Assembly (NCBI RefSeq): GCF_000150275.1
Contig: NW_002060966.1
Coordinates: forward strand, 653,922 to 717,921
Length of the DNA stretch: 64,000 nt
Source: Trichoplax adhaerens
Taxonomy: Eukaryota; Animalia; Placozoa
Direction: 5' to 3'
Shown: positions 3,953 through 60,516 of the stretch, one piece after another
Position numbering within the stretch: position 1 is the stretch's first letter
How the letters are laid out: the number at the start of each line of letters is the position of its first letter
Program-made: the position numbers and the translations under genes
Notes under the pieces: model-generated
The model's input: only the letters and a program-made list of their open reading frames with translations
What the model was told of the DNA's origin: nothing
The model's database searches: none

Positions 3953-4252
3953 GTTTCATTCTTTTTCCTAAAGTGTTTAATGAACGTGCAGGGGATATTT
4001 CTAATGCGTCACAAACTACTAAAAAATCGTAATCGTCACGAGTTAAAAGGATTTCCATTAAAGCTACAGATCGATCAGCTGGATTTTGCATTCCATTTAT
4101 ATTCTCAATTTTTGCCGATGTTAAGACACTCTCGCGTCGTAAAATTTGCTTGATTTCGTCATATGGATTTTTTCTCTCAAAATCTTTACGACAATACTCT
4201 AGTGCAAGCCGAGTTGCGCCGCAAAAAGAGTGTGGACTATAAGGATTTTCAT
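3953..4252 (-). CDS. CARD (death-fold) exon, phase 1-1, unit 1
   Basis: ttctag|AT GAA...ATG AAA C|gtaagt, 300 nt open: ENPYSPHSFCGATRLALEYCRKDFERKNPYDEIKQILRRESVLTSAKIENINGMQNPADRSVALMEILLTRDDYDFLVVCDALEISPARSLNTLGKRMK. Helical CARD-like pattern, homologous to 50301..50684. Read-through would stop at 3927. Missed by the ORF track. Confidence 0.75.
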
Positions 4253-4451
4253 CTAGAAATATTACAGTAGACTAGTAAGATGAATTTTATACATGCCTTG
4301 TGAGAATTTAGCTAGTAACTTTAGCTATCAGCTCAACTATAAAAATGTAACTATTGCTAATCGTAATTTTTTAAGACTTGGAGAAAGAGAATGACCGCAC
4401 CAGCTAGTTTGCTTATAAAGGTGTGAATAAATGTCTTACGTCATTATATAC

Positions 4452-4899
4452 TGTGTCACAAATCCCACTTGTGATTTGGTTAGGTCAGGTGCTATAGTAA
4501 TTGTGTATGTCTTCCACTAACTTGGAAGTCTTCTTCTCAGGGAAAACTAACTCTTTCCTCACAGTCACACAACTACTCAGGTTTCTTTCAGACCACTAGC
4601 ACTTTTTATTCACCAGTCATTTGGTTCCTAGTCTCTACTAGTTCGTCCTAGCCCGGAGCGACTACTGCCGGCAGATGGCAATTCGCTCGGCCTTTTATAC
4701 AATCCCCACTCGTTTGTGGGGCATACTAGTAAATTGCTCCTTCCACAAATTGTATAAGTTACTATAGGGAATTATTCCCAGACAATTAACATGACTTAGT
4801 AGGAGCTTGGATAGTAAACAACACTAATGAAAAACAGCCAATTAGCGAGCCTGAGCTCAGCACCAATACAAGTAATTAATTATTGGAGCAGTTATAACA
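4452..4899. mobile_element. Inserted repeat (possible LTR fragment)
   Basis: Absent from the duplicated flank at about 5660-5690. Shares the motifs gtaaacaacactaatga and ctcagcac with the element at 41510-42130. No clear TSD. Confidence 0.4.
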
Positions 4900-5197
4900 A
4901 CTACCATAACGATCGAAAAGAAAAAAAAGCTCTGATCTTGATTTAGTCTATAACAATCGCTGTAACTAATCTATAACTATCACATATAGAATTATTGAAA
5001 TAAAGGCAATGTACTATCTAAACTAAAAAATTAATGTCGTAAAGTTCTGGACTGATATCAATAAGATGCATATTTAATTTCCGTTGTAATTCAGAATATT
5101 GGATATGGAATAACAACAGAAATTAAACTCATTTTTTTAGCACTAAAACGTATCCTAGCTTTTACGGACTGCGATCAAAACGTTTGTAGCAACTGCA

Positions 5198-5464
5198 CTA
5201 ACCATTCGTGGAATCTAATCGTTCAAGAGATGGCTTGGAATCCTTTAGAAATCTCCAACAATCCTCCCTTAAAGCCTCAGATCGATAAGTTGTATTTTGT
5301 TTTCCATTTATATTCTCAGCTTCTGCCGGAATTAAGACAAACTCGCGTCGCAAAGTTTGCCTTGTTTCGTCATATGAATTTTTTCTTTCAAATTCTGCAC
5401 GACAATACTCTAATGCAAGAGGTGTTACGTTGCTTATAAGAGGGTGGGCTATCTCAATTTTCAT
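5198..5464 (-). pseudogene. Degenerate chimeric CARD/linker exon
   Basis: 5' part duplicates the 3953..4252 CARD exon (LALEYCRAEFERKNSYDE). 3' part matches the end of linker exon 5996..6172 (DSKPSLERLDSTN G|gttagt). Phase-1 reading hits TGA at codon 4 and a +1 frameshift. Confidence 0.65.
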
Positions 5465-5995
5465 CTAGAAATATTACAGTAGACGGATAAGATATATCTT
5501 ATACATGCCCTATGAGAATTTAGCTTGCAATTTTAGCTATCAGCTTCATCTACAAAAATGTGACTATTGCAAATCATAATTCTTTAAGACTTGTAGAAAG
5601 AGAATGACAGTACCAGCTAGTTCGCTCAAAAAAAAGTATAAACAAATGTCTTACGTTAATATACACCGATAAAATACTTCTTTATAACAACTACCATAAC
5701 GATCGAAAAAAAAAACACAAAGCGGTAATCTTGACTTAGTCTATAACAATCGCTGTAAAATATGTAGGACCACCACATATAAAATTATGGAAATGAAGGC
5801 AATGTACTATCTAAATTGAAAAATTAAAGTCGTAAATTTCGCTATTTATATCAATAAGATGCTTTTTTAATTTCTGTTGTAATTCATAATGTTGGACATG
5901 GAATAACAACAGAAATTAAACTCATTTTTTTAGCACTAAAACGTATCCTAACTATTATGGGCCGCGATCAAAACGTTTGTGGTAACTGTACTAAC

Positions 5996-6172
5996 CATTC
6001 GTGGAGTCTAATCGTCCACGAGCTGCCTTGGAATCCTCTGATGAAGAATCAAGCTGATTTCGCTTCCTTTTAGTACCACAAAATGGTGATGTTGATTTTA
6101 AATTTTCGCCGCTATTTTGCTGTAAAGAGCTGTCAGCGATGGAATCGTAATCAGACTGATTTTCGTCTTCTC
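5996..6172 (-). CDS. Acidic/basic linker exon (type c), phase 1-1
   Basis: ttacag|GA GAA GAC GAA AAT...GTKRKRNQ...TCC ACG AAT G|gttagt, 177 nt open. Homologues at 51105..51254 (-) and 40968..41159 (+). Confidence 0.65.
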
Positions 6173-6694
6173 CTGTAATACAGGTTCATTTAGATATTAT
6201 TATATTATCATTATCCCCGTAATTATTAAATAAAATTAAAGACGAAAGAATAGTTGAAACGAACATACGTCTATGAAAGCAAACAATAAATAGTATTTGT
6301 TACGGAGTTAGACTCATACGAATATAGAATATATGACTTTCACTTTCATATATTTGGCTCTCTAGCAATTAGGCGTTTATTATGATGTATTCAGTAAATA
6401 TTTAATTCATAAATGAATTAGATATTATTTTAATGATCTATGGAGTATTAGATAATGATACTTTATAAAGAAAAGGTTGAGAGATTGAAACATGTAGTAG
6501 AAAATAGCTAGAAATTTCTTCCGATTTTTATCCAAACAAAAATAACTCTTTGTTGAATGAAATTACCGATTCATATCAAATTGCGACCAATTATTAGAAA
6601 GCGTTTAATTACAGTTATGACATACGCGTATGTGTAAATTTGTAATAATTGGTGAGAGTTGTGACGTATAAGTGAACTTGCAAATAATTGTAAC

Positions 6695-7175
6695 TGTAGT
6701 GCAGCCCCAAATGTAACTTAGATACTATTATAAGACTGTACGAGAATAACTTAACTTGTAAGCTAGAGTGTAAGATTGTGTAATAGTCTATTTGTAGAAG
6801 ATGTTTACAGTATGTATTGTAGCGAATCTATTAAGATGTTTATATAAAGATCTGAGATATAAATAGATTTGCGCTAAGTATGTTAGTACTGTAAGTATTG
6901 TATTGTAATGCTTAAAATAGACGCGCGAATTATGAATAGATTGCGCGATAGTAAATTTAGATCTAATCTTGCGACTTAATGGGCAAGATAAGATTTGTTA
7001 CAGTAAAAGCATTCTGCAACTAATCGTATATAAATCGTGAATTTTGCTGTAATAAGTAGATTGTCAGATAGTCAGATAGTCCTTGGTACTTAGACGAACC
7101 TAACTTCTGTAATAAAGTGAAATTTGCAAGAAACTGTAGTTCTTGATTTATTGTTTTGAAGATCACTTTATCACA
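6695..7175. mobile_element. Solo LTR, family A
   Basis: Starts TGT, ends ACA, flanked by the 5-bp TSD GTAAC. Inverted homologues at 35336..35661 and about 37826..38308. Confidence 0.75.
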
Positions 7176-7401
7176 GTAACTGATGAGAGTTATGATATAC
7201 GAGTAAATTTATAAAACTCATAACTGATGAAAGTTATCATGTATGAGTAAATTTGCAATAATTATAACTAACGATATTCATGATATTATCTCAATACTCT
7301 ATATCTGATTGCATGGTTTCAAGAATTAAGCTATGTTCATTCTATTATTGAGGTGCTATTGCTGTTAGAAGAATAATGGATATTGAGTTTTTTGTACATA
7401 C

Positions 7402-7530
7402 TATCAGCCGACGATTTAGCAGTATCTTCTGCATCACATGTTGATAATGTTGATGGATCAGGAGAAGTGCTTTCTTGATTCAATAAAGTTGATTTGATGT
7501 CGTTACAAGGCAAACGCGACGAAAATAATA
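7402..7530 (-). CDS. Ser-rich linker exon (type a), unit 1
   Basis: ctgtag|TA TTA TTT TCG TCG CGT TTG CCT...GCT GAT A|gtatgt, 129 nt. Homologous to 30290..30493 and 52327..52532. Confidence 0.55.
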
Positions 7531-8107: not shown

Positions 8108-10284
8108 TTATACGAAATTACCTGAATTCCAGGCTTTCATATCGGCTAACTTAGGTTTGGCAAGGCATTTAACGTTAGTGCATGTGATTATTTGCTCTTC
8201 AACATAAATAGGAAAAGGGATCAATTGATCACATTTTAGGCAAGGAAAAAAATATCCACAGTCAATTTCTTGTCGTTCAGGGTGAACATCTTTCACAATT
8301 TTCGATAACATTGTTTTAAAATAAACATGTAATTGATCGTTACTTAATAGTTTTGAAATTTCTTCCAGTGTAATCTGGTCATCTTCTTTCGATTCATCTA
8401 CAGTTTCATAGTAATACTGAATTCTAATATGTGATCCGCTCTTTTCCACTATAATAGTATAATTACGATGTTTTGGTAAATACTTAGCACTATGATAATA
8501 TAATTCAACATCCAATTCTGATTGGGATGACAGTAAAAACTGATGAAAGATTTGATCTGTAATATATAGAGGTGAGTTTTTATCGAAACCGAGATAAAGC
8601 CAAGGTGATTGAAATCCGTATCTTAATTCGCTGTCTGCTTCTTTCTTACGTGATGATAACAAATGAGGAAAAAAATACTGTTCATTCATACTAGCTTTTA
8701 TGTCCTCCAGATTTCTTGAAGCTTTGTAAATTAAACGATTTCGTTCCATTACTTGTAGCAGAGAATCAATATCTTCTTCCATTAATGCTTCATGACTTAT
8801 TGCACACTTTACTGAGGCTTTAGTAACGATTCCATAATCCCTAGCCCATTTGCAATATTCCCTGCTCTTGCTACTACTGGCAAGATGACGTTGCTTATAA
8901 TTATCGACCAATGTAGAAATTTTGCGAAAGTTATCGTAAAACCAACTTAATTCTGTAACTATAAGACTATCAGTCTCACAGTATTGACTAAATATTATTT
9001 CTCCTATGCCGTGTAAAAATTTTAGAACGTTTATAATCTCACTCTGCTCCATCCGGTTTCTAGCTTTAGCGTAAACTTGTTCTAGTGTCTGAATATATTG
9101 CATACCGGTGGAATTCTGCTTATCTTGAGAATGGCTAATAATCCTATCAGATACTAGTATAGGATTATCGAATAATTCCGCCATTATGTACCATTTAAGT
9201 TTAATTTTCTGTTTGAAGAACGGAACGTCTAGGATACAATTTTGAATTTTTTCGCATAATTTGTTCCAGCTACTGCTATTGACCGTCTCCTCTAAATCTT
9301 TACTCTGATTTCCACCAACTGTATTGATTATTATTTCCGGAGAATAAAAGTGTGATTTATACTGTGGCATTTTCATATCCAACTCATCCATAAATTGACT
9401 TCGTCTAGTCCACTGCGCTTCTTCTGTTAATTTATCATCGCTATTAGTGGCAACAAATAGAATGATTGGCAATGGAATTTCGTCCTCTTGACTATCAATG
9501 CTAATATATAACTGATTCTCTTTTGTATTCCAATCAATTGCATTAATCAGCCATTCCTGAAATGAAGTCATATAATCATGGCGACCAACACCGTAATCAC
9601 TACTGACAATTTTATCCAGTTTGATGCTGACATCAAAAGGAGCAATGTAAACATTATGCTGAAATTTGAAGGGTTGATAGTAAGCGTGATTGTTAAAATT
9701 CCAAATTTTAGCAAACTGATTATCATGGTAATATTTACGACTCTGATGGAATTTCTGGAAACATCGCGAGAAAGACGGTGAAGATAAACTTTTAGTAGTT
9801 TCATTAAGCAGGCTGATAATATTGTCACTAGCTGTGGTGATTTCGTTATCATTATTATTAACGGGATAGTCTATATCGATGTTGTCAACTATAATTTTAT
9901 TACTACTAGAAATGGCAATTCTACTTTTATCACTAGGCTGATTGTTGCCTATTTCAAGAGTAGAAGAAAAAATTCTTTGTAATTCAGGGTTTGGTGATAT
10001 ATTCCCCTGCTTTTCTATGACTGATAATACTTTACTATCGATGAAAGATTGTCTGTCCAAAATAATTTTTTCGTCCGAATTACTTGCTTGTTTTATGGTA
10101 TCCAAGTTGATTAACACCGGAGTAGCATTAGGAGAACTTTCAGGTTGTTTAGTTAGTAATTTATATATAAAAGATTTGTCTTCATGATTTGGTCCAATAA
10201 GCATTATATTCGCAAAGTTATTTGAAAATTCACCACGATCAAGCGCTGTTTCAAAGGCTTCTTTAAATTCTCTTATCGCTGTCC
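8108..10284 (-). CDS. Roc-COR (ROCO family) terminal exon with C-terminal Cys-rich motif, unit 1; degenerate GTPase motifs
   Basis: ORF 8108..10204 extends upstream to the acceptor aatcag|GG ACA at 10284. P-loop-like LIGPNHEDKS, G3-like IWNFNNH, G4-like LFVATNSD. COR motifs LKFLHGIGEIIF, ELSWF and YFFPHLL. C-terminal CxxC...CxxxxC. Confidence 0.8.
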
Positions 10285-10634: not shown

Positions 10635-11244
10635 TAGCTATGATTAAAATAGAGCTTTTGTCCCTAACTTCCACATTGGCGGATTTCCTTGCAGTAGTTT
10701 TTTGCTCGGATAATTCACTCTGGCTATGATCTATTGATTAGATAATAAAATACTGATTAACTTTCGTCATAAAATTATACAACCTTCATTAAGTAGTATT
10801 AATGAGTTGTATTACCTGATGATGATGAAGTTGCCAATTGTTCAGGTACCTTACTAGGATGGTATTTGCCTTTTGTCTTTAATGATATAAATGTTATACG
10901 ATTTGCCATTTGCTGCGAATAGCCTTTGTCTTCACTTTCCCTATACGCTTGAATTTTTGTACCTAAATTAAATTTCATTATTTCTAGTTAAATCTTTATA
11001 CTCGTCATATAAATGCAGATATTTGGCCGGAACTATGAACGGCCAGTTAATAAACATTAGCTATTCTAAATAGTATTTTGAAGTCTCGGCCTCAAATACG
11101 TCAGCATATATCGGCAATTATGTCTAATGCATTCGATTAAGTAATATCACTTATTAGCCGTACTATTTTTGTTATTCATAGGTAAAATATCAACTGTGGT
11201 ATCTTCTATATTAAAACTTTTATTATTTGTTACACTAGTGCTAC
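10635..11244 (-). CDS. Three linker exons joining TPR to Roc-COR: 11244..11164, 10962..10816, 10730..10635
   Basis: 81, 147 and 96 nt, all phase 1-1 and open, with AG/GT boundaries (gtacgg, gtaata, gtgagt). All three are conserved in unit 3; the 81- and 96-nt exons are conserved in unit 2. Confidence 0.7.
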
Positions 11245-13678
11245 CTTGCAATTAAAATATTGGTGAGTCATTGTTACAGTGTTATACACTGCAATATCGA
11301 GGTAATAGCAGAAACAATTATGTTAGGATAATTTTGTTGATTTACCCTTATATGAAGAGTTTCTAATTTAGATATGTGATATTTAAATGTAGCACTTGCT
11401 TTTATGGTGATATATACAGCCTACTGAAATTATTAGTTTTTAATTAGGGAATCGAGAATAATCTTCTTACAATTCAAATCACTGTGATTTTAATTTACTT
11501 ATGGTAGATTGTAGATTATCGTAGAAATGTTCCGTAATAGGACATTCTGACAATTTTTTATTAGTCATTGGATGTCTACGTTCGCATATACTGTTGTCTT
11601 CATTCGGTAGTAGTAGATAAAATTAACCTTTGATTCATTATCAGGTTTAAACGTCAATATGACTAACTAGGATGTCTTTGCGATTGTAAAAGAGTATATA
11701 AATGCGATAAATCGTATAATAAAGAGAGTTCTTATGATTAGTGTTTAACGTAAGATACGAGGCGTCTAAGTCTTTTTGTAATCTATTAGTATAGTAAAAG
11801 AGTTCATGAAAGAGTAGATACTGCTCCCTGATATGTGGTTCAGGGAATCGACTGATTGATCGTGCATTACGTTATCTTGTAGCAAAGCTGTTTTGTAACA
11901 GTAATGACATTCTTTTGAAACATTTTTTCAATTCAAAGAATAGAAATAAGAGAGTTTCTAAAATAATTATATGGAACAAAAATATCCTACAATTAAGCCA
12001 AAAAATATTTGTAAGAAAGTTCGCTTCTTCGACTGTATATAATTCTTATCTGAAAATGATGCGGAATATACCTCCTTTCATTTAATGATCGTCGTCAATT
12101 TGAGCTACAGAAATTACTGCTAACTCTAGCAGACAAAGTATTCTATTATAGAATTAAACGCTATTTAATTATCTTTGTATATTTATAATCTAGACATCAT
12201 AAACAAGAGAATTTGAATTATTTCTGCTCGTATTACAATCTATAAGACTTGGTATTCATTTGAAAATTCTAATCTTATGTTTCTGCTTGATGGGAAATAT
12301 AGACACTTGCTACATCAATATGTTTTAAACGTAAACTCTATTACTAATATAAATATAATTATTTTAATACGTAATTTTACTATCACAATACATTTGAAAG
12401 CAATTATTAGTGCTGTAATCTATTGCTACAGCTACCCTTGCAGCACATGAAGCAGCACAGTACTTATAATAAATTTTACTTTAATCTGTAATACTAATTC
12501 CTCAGCCTATGGTACAGCAACTAGAATCTTTAGGTTAATACACTAACGAATTGCTAGATATAACGTAACTCTCATACTTTCTATTGTTCACTATCCAAGT
12601 TATACACCTATCAGTGGTTATAAATATATTTGTTACGCTATCAGTATTTCTTTGAAAACAATGATATTATTACGATTAAGTTATCATTTACGGATATCTA
12701 AAGTAATAAATAATCTCATTCATGTGTTTATCTCGATTACGAGCTCTATCAACTTTATAAATTTCCAATACCTACATGAAACAAATTACTATTCCGCCGT
12801 AATATCATAAAGATTTGCTTTATTTTTAACAGAAATGGCTATATAGGCTTTATATTTCTAATAAGTTCGAAGAAAATTTTATCGTAAACTGTAAATTTGT
12901 ACGTGAGTTATTTTCATGAAGGTGACGTCTATTAAGCAGTGTCGTTAACATTTTACGTACCGTTAGCCATGGAATCTTCTATGATTTTTCCGTCATTTGC
13001 ATTATTACTATCTATCGCTCTGTTAGTTAGTCTTGTCGATGATAGTGCTAAAAATAATTATGCAATTAAAAAATAGCAGAAAAAGTGGGTTAGGCTACTA
13101 AATTATTTTAACCTTTCAAATGAGCGTAAAATAACATAATTTAGAAAGATACGAGTACACTTGTAATTAAAATTTTTAGTTAAGATACTTTTTAGCCTCA
13201 GTATATTTATTTAGATCACGATAATAACAATTAAATCTAATCAACTATAGCTTTTATACTGAAATTAGTTACTCATCTATTACTAAATCTCAATTAATAT
13301 ATGTTCATTTAGATTGATCAAAATTTGATATATAATTAGAGTATCTAGCTATTGAATAAGTACCGATTATATTTTATTATTGTAGCCATCTATCATTAAA
13401 CATAATGTTACTGATGATGCAACGTGGGAATTATTATTGTTAACAGATAATTTTTAATTTCTGACTATAGTTTCGTTAAATTGCTATTCTGATATGTATT
13501 GGAAGATCTAAAGGGCAGTTAATTTACTGAGAGCATGACTGACAGATTTTGGTTTAATGTTTTAGTCGTACGAATAATAACCTAAGTAACAAACGTAAAC
13601 TTAGCTCTAACGCTAATTACTAGTGAAAGTCAAATATGCTACAGAATAATGAACTATACCTTTTAGAATAAGTATCAA

Positions 13679-15414
13679 TTATATATTACCTGGTTGATAT
13701 GGCGGGTTCTCTGGCTGTTCATTGCAATGATTAAGGGTCCTGCAATTGTTATTTGCCTCACATTTTAACTTTTCTGCTATTTTATCGATTAGTCTTGTCA
13801 ATCTAGAAACATTTATTTGATTTTTTTCACTTAAACTATTTTGCATATCTAAAGCCTTTTGGTACATTTTCTGTGAACTAAGATAGTCTGAAAATAATCC
13901 TAACATTTTGCCAATTTGTTCGTAAATTCTGGCTTGATCTTGTCGTAAAGAATCTTTTTCTGTCATATACTTTTCTGAGCCTAACATTTTATCATCGCTA
14001 CGTCGATATTTTTCTAGCCTTGTCTCACTATAATAAGAGCTTACAAGGTCTAAATTATTCGATTGGCAAACTCTTTCCCGAAGAATAAAACTCGTCTCGT
14101 ACCATTCTTGAGCTTCTTCTAATTGATTTTGTTTCTCGTATACTTCTGCTATGCTATCCATAGTATCCGCCCCAAGTATACCGCGATGTCCAGAGATGGT
14201 AATTTGAATTTTCAAGGATTTTTCAAACATACTCAAGGCTTGCTTAAATTCCCCTTTTGCTAGATAAACTCTACCAATCCCATACAAAGTTTTACTTAAT
14301 TCAACTTCATGCTCAGATCTATCGGAAGATGAGTAAAATGTTTTGCTATATTCATAATACGATATTGAAGTGTCATATTCACCTTTCTTGAAACATATTT
14401 CCCCTAATACATTTTTTAATTTTGCCTTAAATCTTTCACAGTAATCATTTCTTCCTTTGCAATTTTCTTCAGGTGTTAAGAACTTGTAATGCTTCTCAGC
14501 ATCATCTAATTGATCAGAAGCAAAGTAAGCCTTGCTTAAATATTCGTTGGAGATTAGTAATAAATAATCTTGACTTTTGAGTATCTTCTCTTTTATTCTG
14601 TATGATTTTAGGTATTGGATTATAGCTACTCGATAATTACTCTGCAAATAAAATATATTGCCAGCAGTATCGTACAACAAAGCCAGAAATAGTCTTTTTT
14701 TTTCTTTCTCTCGTAGACAATTTTCCACTTTGTTCAATTGATTACTTAGATTCTTTTCACTTATAAGCTGATCTGAATGGACTAAATCAAGACATTCGCT
14801 ACGCTTAGAGTCTTTCTTCATGAGAGGTGATATGCTTTTTAGCTGGGATTGAAGAGATTGTATATATATATTCCAAGCCTGCTCATATTTATGTTGCAAA
14901 ATAAGTACTTTAGCCGCATCATGTTCGATTATAGTATACAACGTCAATCCCTCTTTTTGATCTAAGTAAGTAATTGCTTTATCACAATAGTTTAAAGCTT
15001 CATCGTACTTTTCTTCTCTTATGCAGATGTTAGCTTTTATATTATAACATTTAGCAATTAAAGATCTTTCACAAATATCTTCAGCATATGACACGGCAGT
15101 AGTAAAATATTTATTCGCCTTATCTAATTCATATAATTGAAAGTGGCACGCCATCATACCAGCTGTAGTCCTGAATTTAACTTCCATCAAGTCGTTTTTA
15201 TCAATAAGGTTTTCCTTTCTGTTATCGATTTGATCCACTTGTGTGTACTCATCTATTGCTTTGATATAACTTCCATTCTCATAGAATTTATCTGCTCTAT
15301 TGAGCATAGCTTCCAATTTCTTAATCTGAAAATCTCTCTTTCCAACTTCAGATGACAATTTCTTATTTCGTGAATTATTAGCCAAGTTGAACTTCTCACG
15401 ATAGTGGCTACTTC
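13679..15414 (-). CDS. TPR-repeat exon (internal cassette 15414..13690, phase 1-1)
   Basis: TPR motifs throughout the ORF (ALLYDTAGNIFY, YGIGRVY...ALSMFEKSL). Acceptor tgtatag|GA at 15414, donor CCA G|gtaata at 13690, 1725 nt. Confidence 0.85.
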
Positions 15415-31537: not shown

Positions 31538-31621
31538 CAAATTTAGCCTTAATCAATAACTATAGCGCCAGTGATGTTCATCGTCATCATTGGCGAAATT
31601 TTCTTCTACATTAAGGTTTTA

Positions 31622-48067: not shown

Positions 48068-48350
48068 TTAATTTTCATCACCAGCAGTAAACTTTTTTTC
48101 CAATTTTTCTATTATATTTCCAAGTTGGCAACTACTTAAGATTTTGATTAAACGATCCAACTTCGCTTTTTTAGGATATCTACCATACCATTCGTCTAAT
48201 AATTTCATGCAATTTGAGAATCTTCCATCCATGCTGTCAATAATATCTTCAACATCTGCTGAATGAAATTCCTACTTATAAGCAAATTGTTTCAACTTCT
48301 TTCTGGTGATAATTCGGCAATAATCTCAAAGCATTCTCTTCTCTTTTCAT
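48068..48350 (-). pseudogene. Death-domain terminal exon, disrupted
   Basis: tttcag|AT GAA..., translating to EKRRECFEIIAE/(frameshift)ITRKKLKQFAYK*EFHSADVEDIIDSMDGRFSNCMKLLDEWYGRYPKKAKLDRLIKILSSCQLGNIIEKLEKKF, which fits the Death-domain pattern. Not in the ORF track. Confidence 0.65.
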
Positions 48351-50300: not shown

Positions 50301-50684
50301 TGGGAAGTAAATTTTGATCTTTCTCGACATCAATGTTACATTCTTGGATTTTTCTTGACTTTTCTTTAATTTCATCTGCCATATGTTTCATTTTTTCTCC
50401 CAATTTTTGTAATGAATTCAAAGAATGCCTTGCTAATAGATCGCAAACCTTATAAATATCTCGATCACTACAACCTAAAAGGATATCCAACAAAGCTGCA
50501 GAACGTTCAGCTTTTATTTGTTGTCCATTCATAAAATCAATATCTTCAGGCATTAAGATACCCATTCGTAGCAAAAAATGCTTAATATGATCATATGGCT
50601 CCGCGCTCTTAAAGTCTTGACGATAATGCCATAACACTTTACGTATATTGTCGCTTAAAGCTGGCAGACTTTGTGAATCTAAAG
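50301..50684 (-). CDS. CARD exon, unit 3, phase 1-1
   Basis: ttctag|CT TTA GAT...CTT CCC A|gtaagt, 384 nt. Translation IRKVLWHYRQDFKSAEPYDHIKHFLLRMGILMPEDIDFMNGQQIKAERSAALLDILLGCSDRDIYKVCDLL. Confidence 0.75.
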
Positions 50685-51104: not shown

Positions 51105-51254
51105 CATTTGTGTAATCTAATTGCTTGCTAGCTGCCTTGGAACGTTTTCTTTTAATTCCAGAAACTGGTGACATTAGCTCTGAATATTCGCGGCTATTAT
51201 GCATTGAAGGCATATCAGCAACAGTTTCGCAGTCAGACTCATTTTCGTCTTCTT
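51105..51254 (-). CDS. Linker exon (type c), unit 3
   Basis: ttatag|AA GAA GAC GAA AAT...GIKRKRSK...ACA AAT G|gttagt, 150 nt open. Confidence 0.6.
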
Positions 51255-52326
51255 CTATAATACAAGTACATTTGAACTTTATTATATTATCATTACAATC
51301 GTAATTGTTATATAAAATTGAAGATGGAAGAATTCCTAAACTAGAACTTTATTTCTGAAAGCAAACGATAAATAATTAATAAAAGCGTCAGTTTTAAGGT
51401 TACATCGTATGTTGGACATTACAAGGTTGCTGAAAGATCAGATCAACTGTATGAACTTTAGTTTATCAATAAATGCGACACTATAACTACGAAGAATTAT
51501 CCAAAAATGATTCATAATTTTTTACCTCGCTCTCGTTTTCGCCGGTCCTCTATCCGACTTTGTGGTAAGTATTGCTCTCCATTAATTTTTCTCATTGCCT
51601 GAATTGAACAGAAAGATCTAATTATCAATGTTATTTGTTGATTCTCGGAAGATTTTATACTCATCTATATTTGAAATAATATTGCAAATATGAATCAATC
51701 TTAACCTCCGAAACAGACTGAACTAAAAGCTATGAAGAAAAATATTTAAATTTTGGAGTAGAATAAATTTATACTTTACTTTAATAACCCTGTTTACGTT
51801 GTACAATATTTATTAATTGCTCATCGTAAAATATTTATAAATCAATATTGCATGCAAAAGCTACTATTTCACATTAAAGTTATAAAATCTTATAACAAAT
51901 ATAATCTATCAATTATCACTTATTATGAGGTATCTAAAATAATGTAAGAGCTACTCTGATTCCTTTACTATCTTAATTCCATCCATGAATTATTTGTTTA
52001 ATTAAAGACTAAATTATTTATGTCTATCTTTGCAATGATCAACTTATATTATTTAATATTCTAAACGATAGTATAATCATGAACTTTTAATTCTACACAT
52101 TTAACACTATATCGTATTCAAAAACTGTTTAAAATTATAATATTAATATCTTTTACTATGTAACTAATGGTGCTAAATTTTATTAGATCATCTCATACTG
52201 CTACTATAAAAGTTCCTTGATTCTCTAATCGTATTTCTATTGATGAAATAACGTCATGATTACCAATTGTCATATAGTTAGTTACTTATAGCCAGAGAAA
52301 ATCGCTTAACAATCTCAATTACTAAA

Positions 52327-52532
52327 CCATTTCACTTGCATTTCCTTTATGAGAGCTGCTATGCCGTTAGAGCGATAATATACCTTGGAATATGTCTTCG
52401 CATTATCAGCCGACGATGTTAGAGTATCTTCTTTACCACACGTTGATAGTTTTGATGGATTAGAGAAAGTAACAACTTGATCTGATGATGTTGATTTGAT
52501 ACCTTTACAGGGCGAACGCGACGAAAAGAGTA
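52327..52532 (-). pseudogene. Linker exon (type a), unit 3, damaged 3' end
   Basis: Homologue of 30290..30493 with a frameshift near the end and an altered donor. Confidence 0.5.
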
Positions 52533-52584
52533 CTATGGAAAGACATACAAATTATAATTAGAAATTGTAGATTGGATTCCTTTC

Positions 52585-53950: not shown

Positions 53951-56160
53951 TTATTGAAACCTTCCGTTAACAGCGTTAGAAAACCAATACACGAAATTAC
54001 CTGAATCCCAACCTTTCATGTTTGCTAGCTTATGCTTGGTACGGCATTTAGCGTTAGTGCATTTGATTATTCGTGCTGCAACATGACTAGAATAAGCCAT
54101 TAATTGATCACATTTTAGGCAAGGAAAAAAATATCCGCAGTCAAATTCTTGTCGCTCAGGGTAAACATCCTTCACGATTTTCGATAGCATTGTTTTAAAA
54201 TAAACATATAATTGATCGTTGCTTAATGCTGAAATTGCTTTCGTTTTAATCTGATAATCTTCTTTCGGTTCGCCTATAATTTCGTAGCAATACTGAATTC
54301 TAATATGTGATGCACTCTTTCCAACTATTATAGTATAATTACCATGTTTTGGTAAGTATTTAGCGCTATGATAATATAATTCAACATCCAATTCTGATTG
54401 GGATGACAGTAAAAACTGATGAAAGATTTGATCTGTAATATATAGAGGTGAGTGTTTGTCGTAACCTAGATAAAGCCAAGACGATTGAAATCCGCATTTT
54501 AATTCGTTGCCTGTTTCTTTCTTACGTAAAGATAATAAATACGGGAGAAAATACTGTTCATATGTACTAGCTTTTATATCCTCCAGATTTCTTGAAGCTT
54601 TGTAAATTAAACGATTTTGTTCCATTACTTGTAGCAGAGAATCAATATCTTCTTCCAATAATGCTTCATGACTTATTGCACACTTTACGGAGGCTTTAGT
54701 AACGATTCCATAGTCCCTAGCCCATTTGCAATATTCTCTGCTCTTGCTACTGCTGGCAAGACGACGTTGCTTATAATTATCGACCAATGTAGAAATTTTG
54801 CGAAAGTTATCGTAAAACCAACTTAATTCTGTAACTATAAGACTATCAGTCTCACTGTATTGACTAAATATTATTTCTCCTATGCCGTGTAAAAATTTTA
54901 GAACGTTTATAATCTCACTCTGCTCCATTCTGTTTGTAGCTTTAGTGTAAACTTGTTCTAGTGTCTGAATATATTGCATACCGGTGGAATTCTGCTTATC
55001 TAGAGTATGGCTAATATTCCTATCAGATACTAGTATAGGATTATCGAATAATTCCGCCATTATGTACCATTTAAGTTTAATTTTCTGTTTGAAGAACGGA
55101 ACGTCTAGGATACAATTTTGAATTTTTTCGCATAATTTGTTCCAGCTACTGCTATTGACCGTCTCCTCTAAATCTTTACTCTGATTTCCATCAACTGTAT
55201 TGATTATTATTTCCGGAGAATAAAAGTGTGATTTATACTGTGGCATTTTCATATCCAACTCATCCATAAATTGACTTCGTCTAGTCCATTGCGCTTCTTC
55301 TGTTAATTTATCATCGCTATTAGTGGCAACAAATAGAATGATTGGCAATGGAATTTCGTCCTCTTGACTATCAATGCTAATATATGACTGATTCTCTTTT
55401 GTATTCCAATCAATTGCATTAATCAGCCATTCCTGAAATGAAGTCATATAATCATGGCGACCAACACCGTAATCACTACTGACAATTTTATCCAGTTTGA
55501 CACTGACATCAAAAGGAGCAATGTAAACATTATGCTGAAATTTGAAGGGTTGATAGTAAGCGTGATTGTTAAAATTCCAAATTTTAGCAAACTGATTAGC
55601 ATGGTAATATTTACGCCTCTGATGGAATTTCTGGAAACATCGCGAGAAAGACGGTGAAGATAAACTTTTAGTAGTTTCATTAAGCAGGCTGATAATATTG
55701 TCACTAGCTGTGGTGATTTCGTTATCATTATTATTAACGGGATAGTCTATATCGATTTTGTCATCTATAATTTTATCACTACTCGAAATGGCAATTCTAC
55801 TTTTATCACTAGACTGATTGTTGCCTATTTCAAGAGCAGCGGAAAAAATTCTTTGTAACTCAGGGTTTGGTGATATATTCCCCTGCTTTTCTATGACTGA
55901 TAATACTTTATTATCGATGAAAGATTGTCTATCAAAAATAATTTTTTCGTCCGAATTACTTGCTTGTTTTATGGTATCCAAGTTGATTAACACCGTTGTA
56001 GCATTAGGAGAACTTTCAGGTTGTTTGGTTAGTAATTTATATATAAAAGATTTGTCTTCATGATTTGGTCCAATAAGCATTATATTTGCAAAGTTATTTG
56101 AAAATTCACCACGAACAAGCGCTGTTTCAAAGGCTTCTTTAAATTCTCTTATAGCTGTCC
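53951..56160 (-). CDS. Roc-COR (ROCO family) terminal exon, unit 3; degenerate GTPase motifs
   Basis: 709-aa ORF extended to the acceptor at 56160. Same motifs as 8108..10284. Confidence 0.8.
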
Positions 56161-56510: not shown

Positions 56511-57120
56511 TAGCTATGGTTAAAATAGAGCTTTTGTCCCTAACTTTTACACTAACAGATTTCCTTGCAGTAGTTTTTTGCTCGGATAATTCACTCTCGC
56601 TATAATCTATTAATAAGATAATAAAATACTGATTAACTTTCGTCATAAAATTATACAATCTTCATTAAGTAGTATTAATGAGCTGTACTACCTGATGATG
56701 ATGAAGTTAGCAATAGTCCAGTCACCGCACATTGACGGTATTTGCGTTTTGTCTTTGATGATATAAATATTTTACGACTTGCCATTTGCTGCGAATAGCC
56801 TTCATCGTCACTTTCGCTATACGCTCGAATTCTTATACCTAAATTAAATTTCAATATTTCTAGTTAAATCTTTATACTCGTCATATAAATACGGATATTT
56901 GACCGGAACTATGAACGGCCAGTTAATAAACATTAGCTATTTTAAATAGTATTCGGAAGTCTCGGTCTCAAATACGTCAGCAAATATCGACAATTATGTC
57001 TAATGCATTCGATTAAGCAATACCACTTATTAGTCGTACTATTTTTGCTATTCATAGGTAAAATATCAACTGTAGTATCCTCTATATTAAAACTCTTATT
57101 ATTTGTTACACTAGTGCTAC
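56511..57120 (-). CDS. Three linker exons: 57120..57040, 56838..56692, 56606..56511
   Basis: 81, 147 and 96 nt, phase 1-1, open, homologous to unit 1. Confidence 0.7.
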
Positions 57121-58737
57121 CTGGCAATTAAAAATTAAGAAAATATTGGTACGTCATTGTTACAGAGTTATACACTTTAGTATCGAGGTAATAGCAGAAA
57201 CAATTATGTTAGGATAATTTTGTTGATTTACCCCTATATGAAGAGTTTCTGATTTAGTTATGTAATATTTAAATGTAACTCTAGCTTTTATGGTGATACA
57301 TACAGCCTACTGAAATTATTAGCTTAATTAGGGAATCGAGAATAATCTTCTTACAATTCAAATCACTGTGATTTTAATTTACTTATGGTAGATTGTAGAT
57401 TATCGTAGAAATGTTCCGTGATAGACGATTTTGTAATCTGACGATTTTTGATTAGTCAATGGATATCTATGTTCGTAAATACTGTTATCTTAATTAGGTA
57501 GCAGTAGATAAAATTAGCGTTTGATTCATTATCAGGTTTAAACGTCAATATCACTAACTAGGGTGTCTTTGCGATTGTAAAAGAGTCTATAAATACGATA
57601 AATCGTATAATAAAGTGAGTTCTTATGATTAGTGTTTAAGATAAGATACGAGGCGTCTAAGTCTTTTTGTAGTCTGCTAGTATAGGAAAACAGTTCATGA
57701 AAGAGTAGATACTGCTCCCTGATATGTGCTTCAGGGAATCGACTGATTGATCGTGCATTACGTTATCTTGTAGCAAAGCTGTTTTGTAACAGTAATGACA
57801 TTCTTTTGAAATATTTTTTCAATTAAAAGAATAGAAATGAGAGTTTCTAAAAGGATTATATGGAACAAAAATATCCTGCAATTAAGCCAAAAAATATTCG
57901 TAAGAAAGTTCGCTTCTTTGACTGTACATAATTCTTATCTCTAATGATGCGGAATATACCACGTTTCATTTAATAATCGTCATCAATTTGAGCTACAGAA
58001 ATTACTGCTAACTCTAGCAAACAAAGTATTCTATTATAGAATTAAAGGCTATTTAATTACCTTTATATATTAATAATCTAGACATCATAAACAAGAGAAT
58101 TTGAATTATTTCTGCTCGTATTACAATCTATAAGACTTGATATTCATTTGAAAATTCTCATCTTATGTTTCTACTTGATGGAAAATCTAGATACTTACTA
58201 CATCAGTATGGTTTAAACGTAAACTCTGTTACTAATATAAATATAAATATTTTAATACGTAATTTTACTGTCACAATATATTTGAAAGCAATTATTAGTG
58301 CTGTAATCTATTGCTACAGCTACCCTTACGGTACATGAAGCAGCACAGTACTTGTAATAAATTTTACTTTAACCTGTAAGATTAATTCCTCAGCCTATGG
58401 TACAGCAACTAGAATCTTTAGGTTAATGCACTAACGAATGGCTCGATATAACGTAACTCTCATACTTTTTATTGTTCATTATCCAAGTTATGCAATCTAT
58501 CAGTCGTTATAAATATATTTGTTACGCTATCAGTATTTCTTTGAAAACAATGATATAACACATTTGTAAGCAATTATCAGAGCTGAAATCTATTGCTACA
58601 AGTACCCTTGCGACATATAAAACAACACAATACTTATAGAAATTTTGTAGTATAGTCAAACACAGCTTATTACTCGTGCATAAACTAACATACAAAATCG
58701 AGTGCGAAAAATTATTTGGTTTATCTTCTTAATACAA

Positions 58738-60516
58738 CTATTTTGTACCTGGGTGATCGCTTGAATTATCAGACAGTATCCTGACATTTGTCTCCCCATC
58801 GTTACCTTCATTACTACTTAATGGTTCCTCTATGAATTTAGCTATCTTATCAATTTCGTCCTTCAACCACTGAAAGTCTTCTATATCTTGTTCATTGCAA
58901 CTATTTCCATTATTTCCATTATTTTCGCGATTTATCAATGAATATGGACGGCCTGAAAGTAATTTATATATCTTGCGTAGTTTATGATAAGCTGTCTTCA
59001 TTTCTTTATATGGCTTTTGTTTCTTTATATCTACTAAGCAGCTTCTATCTAATGCTAGAATGCTATCGCTACTGCGTATATATTTTTCCCATCTAGTCTC
59101 ACTATAATAGGATCTCACAAAATCGATTTTATGCTTATCGCAGATTTCTTTCCGAAATTTTAAACTTTCCATGTACTCTTTTTTAGAGGCGTCTAACATA
59201 TTAAGACTCTTATATAATTTTGCAATTTCATCTCGAATATCTGCAATCAACAGGCGGCGATGGTTTGATATTCCATTTAGAATTTCCTTGGATTTTATTA
59301 AATTTTCCTTTGCTGTTTTGAATCTGGATTTTTCTAAGTGTGCTTTTCCGATCCCATAGAAAGCTTTACTCAATTCAACTTTATTTCTATACGTATCTTC
59401 TGGGACATTAACAACCCTGTTGTAAAAGAGCGTTGACACTTTAAAAGAATTATAATCACTTTCCCTGTCTTTCTTACGCTTGACTTTTCTCATTCTGAGA
59501 GATATTTCACCCAAAATGTTATTAATTTTTGCCCAAAATTGATAATCGTTGTATTCTTCATAATCCTTATTTTTTTTTATTACTATTTTGAACCAGCTAT
59601 TAGCTTCTTTTAATTTATCTATAGCAAAGTAAGCTTTTCCTAAATATTCCGCTGAATCTATTATGTGCCAACTATTATCTTTAAAGTTTTTCTTCTTGAT
59701 TCTATATGACCGCCGAAAGCAATCTATAGCTCGAAGATAATCACCCTGCATATAAAATAGATTGCCAATGGTATCATTAAGTAAAGCCAACTTGACAGTC
59801 ATTTTTATATCCGACGGCAATGAAGATTTTAATTTATCCAAAAGTGTCTTAGATAAATTTGAAGGTGTTGAGTTTACAGTTGTTTCCTCAAAAATTTTTT
59901 GTATGCTTCGTAGTACTGTTATTGACTTCTTGACATTTTGAGGTTTACAGTTTTCAGTCGTTTTCTCAGTTTTCTCGTTTTCAATCATTTTCTCAATGCT
60001 GTTTTGCATGCTTCTTGATTGTTCTCTTACAGACTTCAGAATAACAGATCGAGCCATGTCATATTTATATTGTAACATATAAACACTTGCTTTACCACCT
60101 TGAACCAAAGTTAGTAAATTATTGGGTTCATTCGAATTTAAATTTCGAATAGCAACTTCAAAATTACGTAAAGCTTCATCATACTCTCCATTTTTGATAC
60201 TTACATTGCCCATTATATACTGAGCTTCAGCAAGTAAAGAATTTAGAAATTTTTCTTTGAAATGTGACTTTTTTGCCTCAAAGTCTTTCTTAACTTTATC
60301 AAGTTGATGAAGCTGAAATTTAGACTTCATTAAACCAATCCAACTTCTACAAGTAAATCTGGTATAATCTTTATCATCAATGCACTCCAACTGCTCCGCA
60401 TCCTTGTTCGTCTCATTATAACACTTTATTGCATTGTAATAGCTTCCATTATCGTAGTAATCGTCTGCTTGATCAAGTGTAGATATTAATTTTTCATTTA
60501 ATGGTTTATTATCCAT
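58738..60516 (-). CDS. TPR-repeat exon, first coding exon of TPR-ROCO gene unit 3
   Basis: 592-aa TPR ORF with donor CCA G|gtacaa at 58749. The spliced model to 53951 is 4302 nt (1433 aa + stop). Confidence 0.85.
   Translation of the reverse strand: MDNKPLNEKLISTLDQADDYYDNGSYYNAIKCYNETNKDAEQLECIDDKDYTRFTCRSWIGLMKSKFQLHQLDKVKKDFEAKKSHFKEKFLNSLLAEAQYIMGNVSIKNGEYDEALRNFEVAIRNLNSNEPNNLLTLVQGGKASVYMLQYKYDMARSVILKSVREQSRSMQNSIEKMIENEKTEKTTENCKPQNVKKSITVLRSIQKIFEETTVNSTPSNLSKTLLDKLKSSLPSDIKMTVKLALLNDTIGNLFYMQGDYLRAIDCFRRSYRIKKKNFKDNSWHIIDSAEYLGKAYFAIDKLKEANSWFKIVIKKNKDYEEYNDYQFWAKINNILGEISLRMRKVKRKKDRESDYNSFKVSTLFYNRVVNVPEDTYRNKVELSKAFYGIGKAHLEKSRFKTAKENLIKSKEILNGISNHRRLLIADIRDEIAKLYKSLNMLDASKKEYMESLKFRKEICDKHKIDFVRSYYSETRWEKYIRSSDSILALDRSCLVDIKKQKPYKEMKTAYHKLRKIYKLLSGRPYSLINRENNGNNGNSCNEQDIEDFQWLKDEIDKIAKFIEEPLSSNEGNDGETNVRILSDNSSDHPGTK

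What the first reader, a model, noticed from the sequence alone, without database searches (positions are those of the whole stretch)
3953..60516. Locus-wide phase-1 modular exon system: variable TPR sensor exons, pseudo-Roc-COR and CARD/Death exons that can be joined combinatorially
Seen in sequence: essentially every intact exon has phase-1 boundaries. This covers the TPR donors (13690, 18741, 36402, 58749), a TPR acceptor (15414), about 15 linker exons, the Roc-COR acceptors (10284, 32757, 56160), four CARD exons and the Death-domain acceptor, almost all on one strand. Any upstream exon can therefore splice in frame to any downstream one. Established: symmetric phase-1 exons are the classic substrate for exon shuffling, and repeat-sensor + NTPase + death-fold is the NLR/Apaf-1 logic. 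Inference: this may be a diversifying intracellular immune-receptor locus that uses a Roc-COR scaffold instead of NACHT/NB-ARC and varies by alternative splicing and unequal recombination.
Basis: partly seen in the sequence, partly recalled or inferred. Interest (0 to 1): 0.9.

Follow-up and report, generated by a model that had tools for sequence, protein, structure and literature searches.

The report
Phase-1 modular ROCO-CARD gene array
This stretch of the placozoan Trichoplax genome holds a tandem array of TPR / dead-GTPase Roc-COR / CARD genes in which each domain is one exon bounded by phase-1 introns; whole exons have demonstrably been swapped between neighbouring genes, but nothing shows that they are mixed by splicing.

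Summary
The window is Trichoplax DNA with three tandem units, plus the start of a fourth, on the minus strand. Each unit is a TPR exon, short linkers, a 2.16-kb Roc-COR-Cys4 exon, more linkers and a CARD exon.

Phase 1 is not special to this locus. Seventeen of 17 junctions I could resolve in distant paralogs elsewhere in the genome are also phase 1, and another locus of this genome was already noted for the same pattern. Trichoplax ROCO proteins with TPR, CARD and death domains were described in 2014.

Evolutionary module exchange is shown. Unit A switches from about 94% identity to unit C to about 97% identity to unit B within 50 nt, inside an intron, and module identities disagree between units.

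Combinatorial splicing is not shown. Public models give one gene per unit, each with its own ATG and stop. Unit B, the unit A death exon and a 10-kb stretch are broken.

Verdict: a birth-and-death ROCO-CARD array with clear exon shuffling, a new variant of a known kind.

The parts
58749..60516 (-). Unit A TPR exon. It is the first coding exon, with ATG at 60516 and a phase-1 donor after 58749.
   Evidence: The frame is open from 60531 to 58741. Pfam TPR_12 scores E 6e-16. The donor CAG|GTACAA was mapped with P0004. The Met aligns with the starts of units C1 and D.
58550..58556 (-). Recombination breakpoint inside the intron, about 195 nt 3' of the unit A TPR donor.
   Evidence: Identity in 50-nt windows switches here. 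Below 58550 unit A is 88-98% identical to unit C and 42-70% to unit B. Above it, unit A is 88-100% identical to B and 44-64% to C. The two blastn matches abut at 58555/58556.
56511..56838 (-). Unit A linker exons 56838-56692 (147 nt) and 56606-56511 (96 nt), both phase 1-1.
   Evidence: Mapped from TrispH2_012052 (P0004).
54001..56160 (-). Unit A pseudo-Roc / COR-A / COR-B / Cys4 exon, 2160 nt, phase 1-1.
   Evidence: AlphaFold2 mean pLDDT is 73. The top 35 Foldseek PDB hits are all ROCO proteins: LRRK2 at 7e-12, C. tepidum Roco, LRRK1 and M. barkeri Roco2. The family profile hits C. tepidum Roco 3dpu at E 2e-10. The GTPase motifs are degenerate. dN/dS against unit C is 0.36.
51105..52502 (-). 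Unit A tail linker exons 52502-52384, 51598-51526 and 51254-51105. The last carries the 'EDENESD...KRKR' acidic/basic motif.
   Evidence: Mapped from TrispH2_011652 (P0002). The model's two further mini-exons, 51002-50947 and 50846-50774, look spurious: they are a phase 1-0 and 0-1 pair whose translation resembles non-coding sequence.
50301..50684 (-). Unit A CARD exon, 384 nt, phase 1-1.
   Evidence: The profile hits RAIDD and Apaf-1 CARD at E 0.01-0.07. AlphaFold2 mean pLDDT is 85. Foldseek's top hits are Apaf-1, RIP2, NOD1, CED-3 and caspase-1 CARDs, with target-normalised TM up to 0.85 and probability 1.0.
48071..49295 (-). Unit A linker exon 49295-49239 and death-domain exon (acceptor 48350, phase 1). 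The death exon is broken.
   Evidence: tblastn to the death domain of paralog P0021 gives 45% identity, E 2e-15. A frameshift near 48300 and an in-frame TAG break the exon, and the reading frame ends at the stop at 48294-48292 after 18 codons.
36402..37523 (-). Unit B TPR exon. It is 5'-truncated and frameshifted, with a phase-1 donor after 36402.
   Evidence: Similarity to unit A covers only 36203-37487, at 93.8%. The TRIADDRAFT_61612 model needs an artificial 149-nt 'intron' to keep the frame. dN/dS against unit A is 0.99.
33103..35793 (-). Unit B linker exons (seven in the TRIADDRAFT_61612 model).
   Evidence: All junctions are phase 1 except 34164|33953, which is phase 0.
31672..32757 (-). 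Unit B Roc-COR exon with an internal deletion of about 1.08 kb.
   Evidence: Self-blastn matches 9586-10789 to 32050-33257 and 7984-8502 to 31538-32049, so the part between is missing. The Trichoplax sp. H2 protein TrispH2_010660 (P0003) carries the missing part, and this genome has no close copy of it.
28595..30493 (-). Unit B tail: linkers 30493-30290 and 29697-29560, then a type-2 CARD exon 28944-28595 ending in a stop codon.
   Evidence: Mapped from P0003; all three junctions are phase 1. The CARD alignment is A2.
18741..20415 (-). Unit C TPR1 exon, with its own ATG at 20415, an intact open frame and a conserved phase-1 donor after 18741. Its downstream partner is unknown.
   Evidence: It is annotated as the stand-alone gene TRIADDRAFT_61610. 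dN/dS against the unit A TPR is 0.64.
13690..15451 (-). Unit C TPR2 exon. The ancestral ATG has become TTG. Either the new ATG at 15451 or the phase-1 acceptor at 15414 is used. The donor follows 13690.
   Evidence: Both public models (TrispH2_010658 and TRIADDRAFT_61609) start at 15451.
10635..13047 (-). Unit C linker exons 13047-12961 (present in only one of the two public models), 10962-10816 and 10730-10635.
   Evidence: all are phase 1-1.
8122..10284 (-). Unit C pseudo-Roc / COR / Cys4 exon, 2163 nt, phase 1-1.
   Evidence: It is 90% identical in amino acids to unit A. Junctions are and motifs.
3930..7530 (-). Unit C tail: linkers 7530-7402 and 6172-5996, a chimeric half-CARD exon 5409-5203 created by a 1.2-kb tandem duplication, and the intact CARD exon 4252-3930 ending in a stop codon.
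   Evidence: The H2 model stops at 5201, whereas the T. adhaerens model splices on to the 4252 exon.
2..1240 (-). TPR exon of the next gene (unit D, P0009), which continues beyond the window.
   Evidence: Its Roc-COR is only 29-30% identical to units A and C, but its CARD is 83% and its linker 71% identical to those of unit C.
38948..46537 (.). Debris between units A and B: a plus-strand orphan CARD exon at 38948-39322, an inverted linker cassette at 39903-41323, and a stop-riddled kinesin-light-chain-like TPR fragment at 46537-44912.

Best explanation
This is a tandem, birth-and-death array of paralogous genes of the placozoan ROCO family. Each gene encodes an N-terminal TPR array, a catalytically degenerate Roc GTPase fused to COR-A/COR-B and a Cys4 mini-domain, an acidic/basic linker, and a C-terminal CARD. 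Unit A also carries a decayed death domain. Each domain lies in a single exon, and nearly every intron is in phase 1, so every internal exon is symmetric. This layout is inherited by the whole family, which has at least 45 Roc-COR exons in this genome, and it is the classic signature of exon shuffling. What is shown: recombination within introns has moved whole modules between neighbouring genes without breaking the frame. Unit A has a unit-B-type TPR on a unit-C-type Roc-COR, unit C has a unit-D-type tail, and an internal duplication has created an extra in-frame exon. What is inferred: each intact unit (A and C) is transcribed as its own gene. The protein would act as an NLR/Apaf-1-like intracellular sensor, with TPR as the ligand or partner-binding part, the Roc-COR as a nucleotide-independent dimerisation or conformational scaffold, and the CARD recruiting CARD-bearing caspases or adaptors. 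Within a gene the symmetric linker exons could be skipped in frame, but nothing shows that this happens or that splicing crosses between units.
For: Organism and gene models: matches of 99.7-100% identity to Trichoplax sp. H2 and T. adhaerens proteins. Phases: 29 of 32 junctions in the window are phase 1, and 17 of 17 resolved junctions in paralogs at 22-30% identity on other contigs are phase 1. Family identity: Pfam finds COR-A in 30 of 34 members, Roc in 23, TPR in about 15 and Death in 7. The family profile hits C. tepidum Roco at E 2e-10. Foldseek places the unit A exon model on LRRK2 and C. tepidum Roco at E 7e-12. Pseudo-GTPase: G1 reads GPNHEDKS against the family GPxNVGK[ST]. G3 reads WNFNN against WDFGG, with a 4-residue deletion. 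G4 reads TNSD against SHGD. Even so, dN/dS is 0.36, so the exon is under constraint. CARD. Module exchange: the identity switch at 58550-58556. Module identities also disagree: Roc-COR is 90% between A and C but 72% between A and B; TPR is 90% between A and B but 53% (A-C1) and 35% (A-C2); CARD is 83% between C and D although their Roc-COR is 29%. One gene per unit: own ATGs and stops. Decay: unit B has a deletion and a frameshift, the death exon is broken, and debris lies between units. Structural difference from H2.
Against: The public models are predictions and they disagree with one another: they differ over the cassette exon 13047-12961, over the tail of unit C, and over a different donor for TPR1. 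TPR1 of unit C has an intact frame, dN/dS below 1 and a conserved donor but no assigned downstream partner, which a strict one-gene-per-unit picture does not explain. The sensor function and the CARD partners are inferred only from domain logic.
Confidence: 0.75

Rival explanations
1. One reading: the whole 57-kb locus is one combinatorial system in which any upstream TPR exon can be spliced to any downstream Roc-COR, CARD or death exon, producing a diversified receptor repertoire from one transcript pool.
For: All module boundaries share phase 1, so every such join would be in frame. Nearly all exons lie on one strand.
Against: Units A, C and D have their own start codon at the homologous position of the TPR exon, and each of units A, B and C has its own terminal exon with a stop codon. 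Joins between units would need introns longer than 10 kb that cross broken and inverted fragments, whereas modelled introns are 71-2727 nt. No public model joins units. Phase 1 is shared by dispersed single-copy paralogs, where no combinatorial choice exists.
Confidence: 0.06
2. Limited isoform diversity within a gene. In unit C, TPR1 and TPR2 would be alternative first exons, as in protocadherin or UGT1A genes, or TPR2 would be a skippable 1725-nt cassette. Symmetric linker exons and the half-CARD exon would be optional.
For: TPR1 keeps an ATG, a 558-codon open frame, dN/dS of 0.64 and the conserved donor. TPR2 has lost the ancestral ATG (now TTG) and has an open frame running up to a good phase-1 acceptor at 15414. 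Two independent annotations of the same DNA differ exactly by in-frame cassette exons.
Against: Both public models start TPR2 at a new ATG at 15451, which has a good context (A at -3, G at +4). TPR1 is annotated as a separate TPR-only gene. The differences between annotations may only reflect predictor choices. There are no RNA data.
Confidence: 0.3
3. The array is mostly dead DNA: relics of a once-active family, with open frames surviving only because the duplications are recent.
For: Unit B is truncated, frameshifted and deleted. The death exon of unit A is broken. One CARD copy in unit C is chimeric. About 10 kb is debris. dN/dS between the TPR exons of A and B is 0.99.
Against: Units A and C keep uninterrupted 1.7-kb and 2.16-kb open frames in 31% GC DNA and intact consensus splice sites. 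dN/dS for Roc-COR between A and C is 0.36 at dS 0.12. The H2 lineage keeps the same genes.
Confidence: 0.08

Closest known systems
Trichoplax adhaerens ROCO gene expansion (Civiero et al. 2014, PMC4104024)
   Same: Same organism and same family. That paper reports at least 17 ROCO genes whose Roc-COR is flanked by TPR, LRR, CARD and death domains. My Pfam scan of the family agrees.
   Different: The passages I searched in that paper give domain cartoons only and say nothing of exon structure, intron phases, tandem mosaic units or a GTPase-dead subfamily. The units here are so divergent that Pfam misses their Roc domain and scores COR-A below its threshold. I could not tell whether they are among the 17 genes.
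Brown-alga LRR-ROCO genes with exon shuffling and alternative splicing (Zambounis 2012; PMC11378527)
   Same: A ROCO scaffold proposed as an immune receptor in place of NB-ARC. The family is expanded, the exons share one phase so shuffling and skipping stay in frame, and alternative splicing is proposed as the source of diversity.
   Different: In the algae each 72-bp phase-2 exon encodes a single LRR, so the repeat array itself can be recombined, and splice variants were observed. Here the whole TPR array is one 1.7-kb exon, the phase is 1, the effector is a CARD, and no splice variants have been observed.
Class 1-1 module shuffling in metazoan multidomain proteins (Patthy; my own knowledge) and intron-recombination mosaics such as KIR genes (as discussed in PMC8998645)
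   Same: Whole domains lie in symmetric phase-1 exons, and recombination in introns swaps them between paralogs.
   Different: The classic 1-1 modules are mostly extracellular. These are cytosolic signalling modules (TPR, Roc-COR, CARD, death domain) in an early-branching animal.
NLR/Apaf-1 STAND receptors, including the exon-modular LRRs of NLRP3 (PMC6642158) and placozoan NB-ARC-TPR/WD40-CARD genes (PMC6321704)
   Same: The same three-part logic of repeat sensor + NTPase-like switch + death-fold effector. Exon modularity is a precondition for in-frame alternative splicing. The genes form lineage-specific clustered expansions.
   Different: The central module is Roc-COR rather than NACHT or NB-ARC, and it appears nucleotide-dead. 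The domain order is reversed, with the sensor N-terminal and the CARD C-terminal.
DAPK1 (Roc-COR + death domain)
   Same: A Roc-COR followed by a C-terminal death-fold domain.
   Different: These genes have no kinase or ankyrin repeats, carry an N-terminal TPR array, use a CARD rather than a death domain, and have degenerate G motifs.

Membership tests
ROCO proteins | A Roc (Ras-like) G domain directly followed by a COR domain in one polypeptide. | tested here: met
   The AlphaFold2 model of the unit A exon aligns over Roc plus COR with LRRK2, LRRK1, C. tepidum Roco and M. barkeri Roco2 (E down to 7e-12, top 35 hits). The family profile hits 3dpu at 2e-10. Pfam finds Roc in 23 of 34 and COR-A in 30 of 34 family members.
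ROCO proteins | Intact GTP-binding motifs: G1 GxxxxGK[ST], G3 DxxG, G4 [NT]KxD-like. | tested here: not met
   Units A and C read GPNHEDKS, WNFNN (with a 4-residue deletion) and TNSD, where most paralogs read GPxNVGK[ST], WDFGG and SHGD. Pfam Roc is not detected in the local proteins. They are therefore structural members but probably pseudo-GTPases.
CARD (death-fold superfamily) | A six-helix bundle with CARD topology and sequence-profile similarity to CARDs. | tested here: met
   Mean pLDDT is 85 and the model is helical throughout. The top Foldseek hits are exclusively CARDs, with target-normalised TM 0.8-0.85 to the Apaf-1 CARD. The profile hits RAIDD and Apaf-1 CARD at E 0.01-0.07. Pfam CARD is not reached at E of 1 or below.
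Death domain | An intact death-domain open reading frame. | tested here: not met
   The exon at 48350-48071 is 45% identical to a paralog's Pfam-positive death domain, but it carries a frameshift and a TAG.
NLR / STAND receptors | A central NACHT or NB-ARC P-loop NTPase. | tested here: not met
   No NACHT or NB-ARC hit in any open frame of the window. The resemblance is functional logic only.
Class 1-1 exon-shuffling modules | Complete domains in exons flanked by phase-1 introns on both sides, with evidence that such exons moved between genes. | tested here: met
   Exon lengths are multiples of 3 and 29 of 32 junctions are phase 1. The intronic breakpoint is at 58550-58556. Module identities are discordant between units.
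Brown-alga-type combinatorial ROCO receptors | One repeat per cassette exon, with observed alternative splicing of the cassettes. | tested here: not met
   The TPR arrays are single 1.7-kb exons. Splicing could not be tested.
Variable-first-exon clusters (protocadherin/UGT1A type) | Several promoter-bearing first exons, each spliced to the same constant exons. | not testable with these tools
   Unit C has two TPR exons, each with an ATG and a phase-1 donor, upstream of one Roc-COR. Testing this needs RNA junction data.

The most novel reading that the evidence does not exclude
Within units, though not across the locus, the phase-1 layout may be used physiologically. In unit C, TPR1 and TPR2 would act as alternative promoter-bearing first exons, or as an optional cassette, on one pseudo-Roc-COR-CARD body. 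Optional linker and half-CARD exons would add further isoforms. That would give a small splice-generated repertoire of GTPase-dead ROCO sensors in an animal without NLR-LRR receptors.
Probability: 0.2. Interest if true: 0.7.

Novelty: new variant of a known kind. Interest (0 to 1): 0.45.

Why it matters
The locus shows exon shuffling caught in the act in an early-branching animal. Cytosolic signalling domains (TPR, Roc-COR, CARD, death domain) each occupy one symmetric phase-1 exon, and a recombination junction is still readable inside an intron. This extends the classic 1-1 module rule, known mainly from extracellular proteins, to death-fold and ROCO signalling genes. It helps explain how placozoans built their unusually varied ROCO, NB-ARC and death-fold architectures. 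It also defines a conserved, selectively constrained subfamily whose Roc domain has lost its GTP-binding motifs. That subfamily is a natural test of the idea that Roc-COR can act as a nucleotide-independent scaffold, which bears on LRRK2 biology. It does not currently provide evidence for a splice-based diversifying immune system.

Tried and rejected
Expression and splice-junction usage remain untested.

2. Pfam on single exons. It found no CARD or Death hit. This was resolved by profile and fold searches instead.

3. Profile of the full-length family alignment (A1) against PDB sequences. TPR hits swamped the output, so I repeated the search with a Roc-COR-only alignment (A3).

4. Relatives outside placozoans. 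phmmer of the Roc-COR exon against 1.84 billion representatives gave only 49 hits. All those whose source I saw are Trichoplax. No non-placozoan relative was identified at the sequence level.

5. Literature search for the gene identifiers (TRIADDRAFT_61609, 61610 and 61612; TrispH2_010658, 010660 and 011652). No paper names them.

6. Junctions my solver could not resolve. Nine junctions in the paralog loci counted here stayed unresolved and are not counted; the poorly fitting mappings on locus L005 were also left out.

7. Joined spliced models. Exons were searched one by one by reference, and full-length comparisons used database proteins only.

8. The idea that phase 1 is specific to this locus was rejected.

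Full report
**What the window is.** The DNA is 31% GC, and all long open frames lie on the minus strand. The 740-residue frame at 56173-53954 matches annotated proteins of Trichoplax sp. H2 at 100% identity. Other exons match T. adhaerens models at up to 100%. The window is contig C1391:653922-717921 of a 105.6-Mb placozoan assembly.

**Anatomy.** Self-comparison, together with public proteins mapped onto the window by my own k-mer and GT-AG junction solver, shows three tandem units and the start of a fourth. They are listed here in gene order, from high to low coordinates.
- Unit A has these exons:
  - TPR exon, ATG 60516 to donor 58749.
  - Linkers 56838-56692 and 56606-56511.
  - Roc-COR exon 56160-54001.
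  - Tail linkers.
  - CARD exon 50684-50301.
  - Linker 49295-49239.
  - Death-domain exon from 48350.
- Unit B has these exons:
  - A 5'-truncated, frameshifted TPR exon (37523-36402).
  - Seven linkers.
  - A Roc-COR exon (32757-31672) lacking about 1.08 kb.
  - Two tail linkers.
  - A CARD exon 28944-28595 that ends in a stop.
- Unit C has these exons:
  - TPR1 (20415-18741) and TPR2 (15451 or 15414 to 13690).
  - Linkers 13047-12961, 10962-10816 and 10730-10635.
  - Roc-COR exon 10284-8122.
  - Linkers 7530-7402 and 6172-5996.
  - A chimeric half-CARD exon 5409-5203.
  - The intact CARD exon 4252-3930.
- Unit D begins with a TPR exon at 1240-2.
- Between units A and B lie a plus-strand orphan CARD exon (38948-39322), an inverted linker cassette (39903-41323) and a stop-riddled TPR fragment (46537-44912).

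**Check of the observation.**
- In the T. adhaerens model of unit C, all 8 introns are phase 1. All seven internal exons are multiples of 3 nt.
- Over all mapped models, 29 of 32 junctions are phase 1, 3 are phase 0 and none is phase 2.
- The phase-0 junctions separate paired 1-0 and 0-1 mini-exons. Unit A's 51002-50947 and 50846-50774 are one such pair, and their translation looks like non-coding sequence.
- The excess is far beyond a typical phase-1 share of 25-30% (my own knowledge), although the units are paralogs and so not independent.

**Domain identities.**
- TPR is strong in Pfam.
- The large exon gives only a sub-threshold COR-A hit, but three further results settle it:
  - A scan of all 1.84 billion representative proteins found 49 relatives, and all whose source I saw are Trichoplax. 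Of the 34 I scanned in Pfam, 30 carry COR-A, 23 Roc, about 15 TPR and 7 Death.
  - A Roc-COR-only profile hits the C. tepidum Roco structure at E 2e-10, and also M. barkeri Roco2 and LRRK2.
  - An AlphaFold2 model of the unit A exon (mean pLDDT 73) retrieves only ROCO proteins among its top 35 PDB matches, with E down to 7e-12.
- The family alignment shows that most paralogs keep GPxNVGK[ST], WDFGG and SHGD. Units A and C instead read GPNHEDKS, WNFNN (with a 4-residue deletion) and TNSD. This supports a pseudo-GTPase.
- Four invariant cysteines follow COR-B.
- The CARD exon gives weak but exclusively CARD profile hits. Its model has mean pLDDT 85 and superposes on the Apaf-1, RIP2, NOD1, CED-3 and caspase-1 CARDs.
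- The death exon of unit A is homologous to a paralog's death domain. It carries a frameshift and a TAG, so the frame stops after 18 codons.

**Phase 1 is a family trait, not a locus trait.** The genome holds at least 45 Roc-COR exons of 700-800 codons on many contigs. I fetched 14 such loci and mapped their proteins. All 17 junctions I could resolve are phase 1. These include TPR|Roc-COR, Roc-COR|death and Roc-COR|CARD boundaries in genes only 22-30% identical to the local ones. Nine further junctions in those loci could not be resolved.

**Evolutionary module exchange is shown.**
- Unit A is 88-98% identical to unit C up to position 58550. From there on it is 88-100% identical to unit B. The switch falls within one 50-nt window, about 195 nt into the intron after the TPR donor.
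- The other end of the A-C block (53776) lies 225 nt into the intron after the Roc-COR donor.
- Module identities disagree with one another:
  - Roc-COR: A-C 90%, A-B 72%, D against the rest 29-30%.
  - TPR: A-B 90%, A-C1 53%, A-C2 35%.
  - CARD: C-D 83%, A-C 42%; unit B carries a different CARD type (23-30%).
- A 1.2-kb tandem duplication in the tail of unit C created an extra symmetric 207-nt exon that fuses half a CARD to a linker end.
- The locus also differs from the H2 annotation. H2 has an undeleted unit B (TrispH2_010660) and a further Roc-COR gene (TrispH2_011654, 61% identical to unit A). Neither has a close copy in this genome.
- dN/dS is 0.32-0.36 for Roc-COR, 0.64 for TPR between A and C1, and 0.99 for TPR between A and the broken unit B. 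The scaffold is therefore constrained and the TPR evolves faster, but there is no signal above 1.

**Combinatorial splicing is not supported.**
- The TPR exons of units A, C1 and D start with an ATG at the homologous position.
- Each unit ends in an exon with a stop codon.
- All public models are one gene per unit.
- Modelled introns are 71-2727 nt, whereas joins between units would span more than 10 kb of debris.
- The one open case is unit C.
  - TPR1 is intact, with a conserved donor, but has no assigned partner.
  - TPR2 has lost the ancestral ATG, which is now TTG. It has both a new upstream ATG at 15451, used by both public models, and a good phase-1 acceptor at 15414.
  - Alternative first exons, a double-TPR transcript, or a stand-alone TPR1 gene all fit the sequence.
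- Two annotations of identical DNA differ by in-frame cassette exons. This shows that such joins are possible, not that they occur.
I built no joined spliced model of my own. Exons were searched singly by reference.

**Comparison with what is known.**
- Civiero et al. 2014 (PMC4104024) already reported at least 17 T. adhaerens ROCO genes with TPR, LRR, CARD and death domains.
- Brown-alga ROCO genes are the published precedent for same-phase exon shuffling plus alternative splicing in ROCO candidate receptors. They use one LRR per 72-bp phase-2 exon (PMC11378527).
- Exon-modular LRRs in NLRP3 are a precondition for its alternative splicing (PMC6642158).
- Death-fold grafting by exon shuffling is described for RIG-I-like receptors (RLRs) (PMC8998645).
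- Kamm et al. 2019 describe placozoan NB-ARC-TPR/WD40-CARD genes but do not mention Roc (PMC6321704).
- To my knowledge three things here are new:
  - the all-phase-1, one-domain-per-exon structure of this family;
  - the readable intronic recombination junctions;
  - a constrained GTPase-dead subfamily.

**Verdict.** This is a new variant of a known kind, of moderate interest.

Noticed in passing
window 54001-54150 and 8122-8270 (C-terminal end of the Roc-COR exons): Four invariant cysteines (CxxC ... CxxxxC) form a small beta-rich mini-domain directly after COR-B in all family members. It has a weak PHD-like hit (PHF8, E 0.04). It may be a family-specific zinc ribbon that I do not know from other ROCO proteins.
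   Followed up: partly
window 45742-45937: There is a perfect tandem duplication of about 93-103 nt (45742-45834 equals 45845-45937 at the protein level, 100%). It lies inside a stop-riddled kinesin-light-chain-like TPR fragment (46537-44912) that belongs to a different TPR subfamily (28% to P0032).
   Followed up: no
window 38948-39322 (+) and 39903-41323: An orphan type-2 CARD exon with an open frame lies on the plus strand. Next to it is an inverted copy of the unit A and unit B tail introns and linker, including an 'EDENESD...KRKR' linker exon at 40910-41164 (+). No plus-strand Roc-COR accompanies them.
   Followed up: partly
Genome contig C1383, about 435-445 kb (locus L010); protein P0033 = TRIADDRAFT_62071: A paralog appears to combine an NB-ARC-type P-loop module (and a death domain, according to its UniRef name) with a canonical Roc-COR in one 1343-residue protein. 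Its H2 cluster-mate is named 'Apaf-1, partial'. The STAND and ROCO families may therefore have exchanged modules. I judged the NB-ARC module from the sequence only and did not test it.
   Followed up: no
Trichoplax sp. H2 proteins P0001 (TrispH2_011654) and P0003 (TrispH2_010660) compared with this genome: H2 annotates a Roc-COR gene that is 61% identical to unit A, and an undeleted unit B. This assembly has no close copy of either (best 61% and 72%). This points to presence/absence and deletion differences between closely related placozoan lineages at this locus, unless the assembly is incomplete.
   Followed up: partly
window 56160-54001 compared with 10284-8122: Synonymous divergence between the Roc-COR exons of units A and C is uneven: dS is 0.054 in the first 330 codons and 0.183 in the rest. 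This suggests a more recent gene-conversion tract over the Roc half.
   Followed up: partly
tail linker exons, e.g. window 51254-51105, 29697-29560, 6172-5996 and 40910-41164 (+): The linker exon before each CARD shares an acidic 'EDENxSD' start and a basic 'KRKR' patch, which looks like a nuclear-localisation signal or a protease-site-like motif. It is conserved although the rest of the exon is low in complexity.
   Followed up: no
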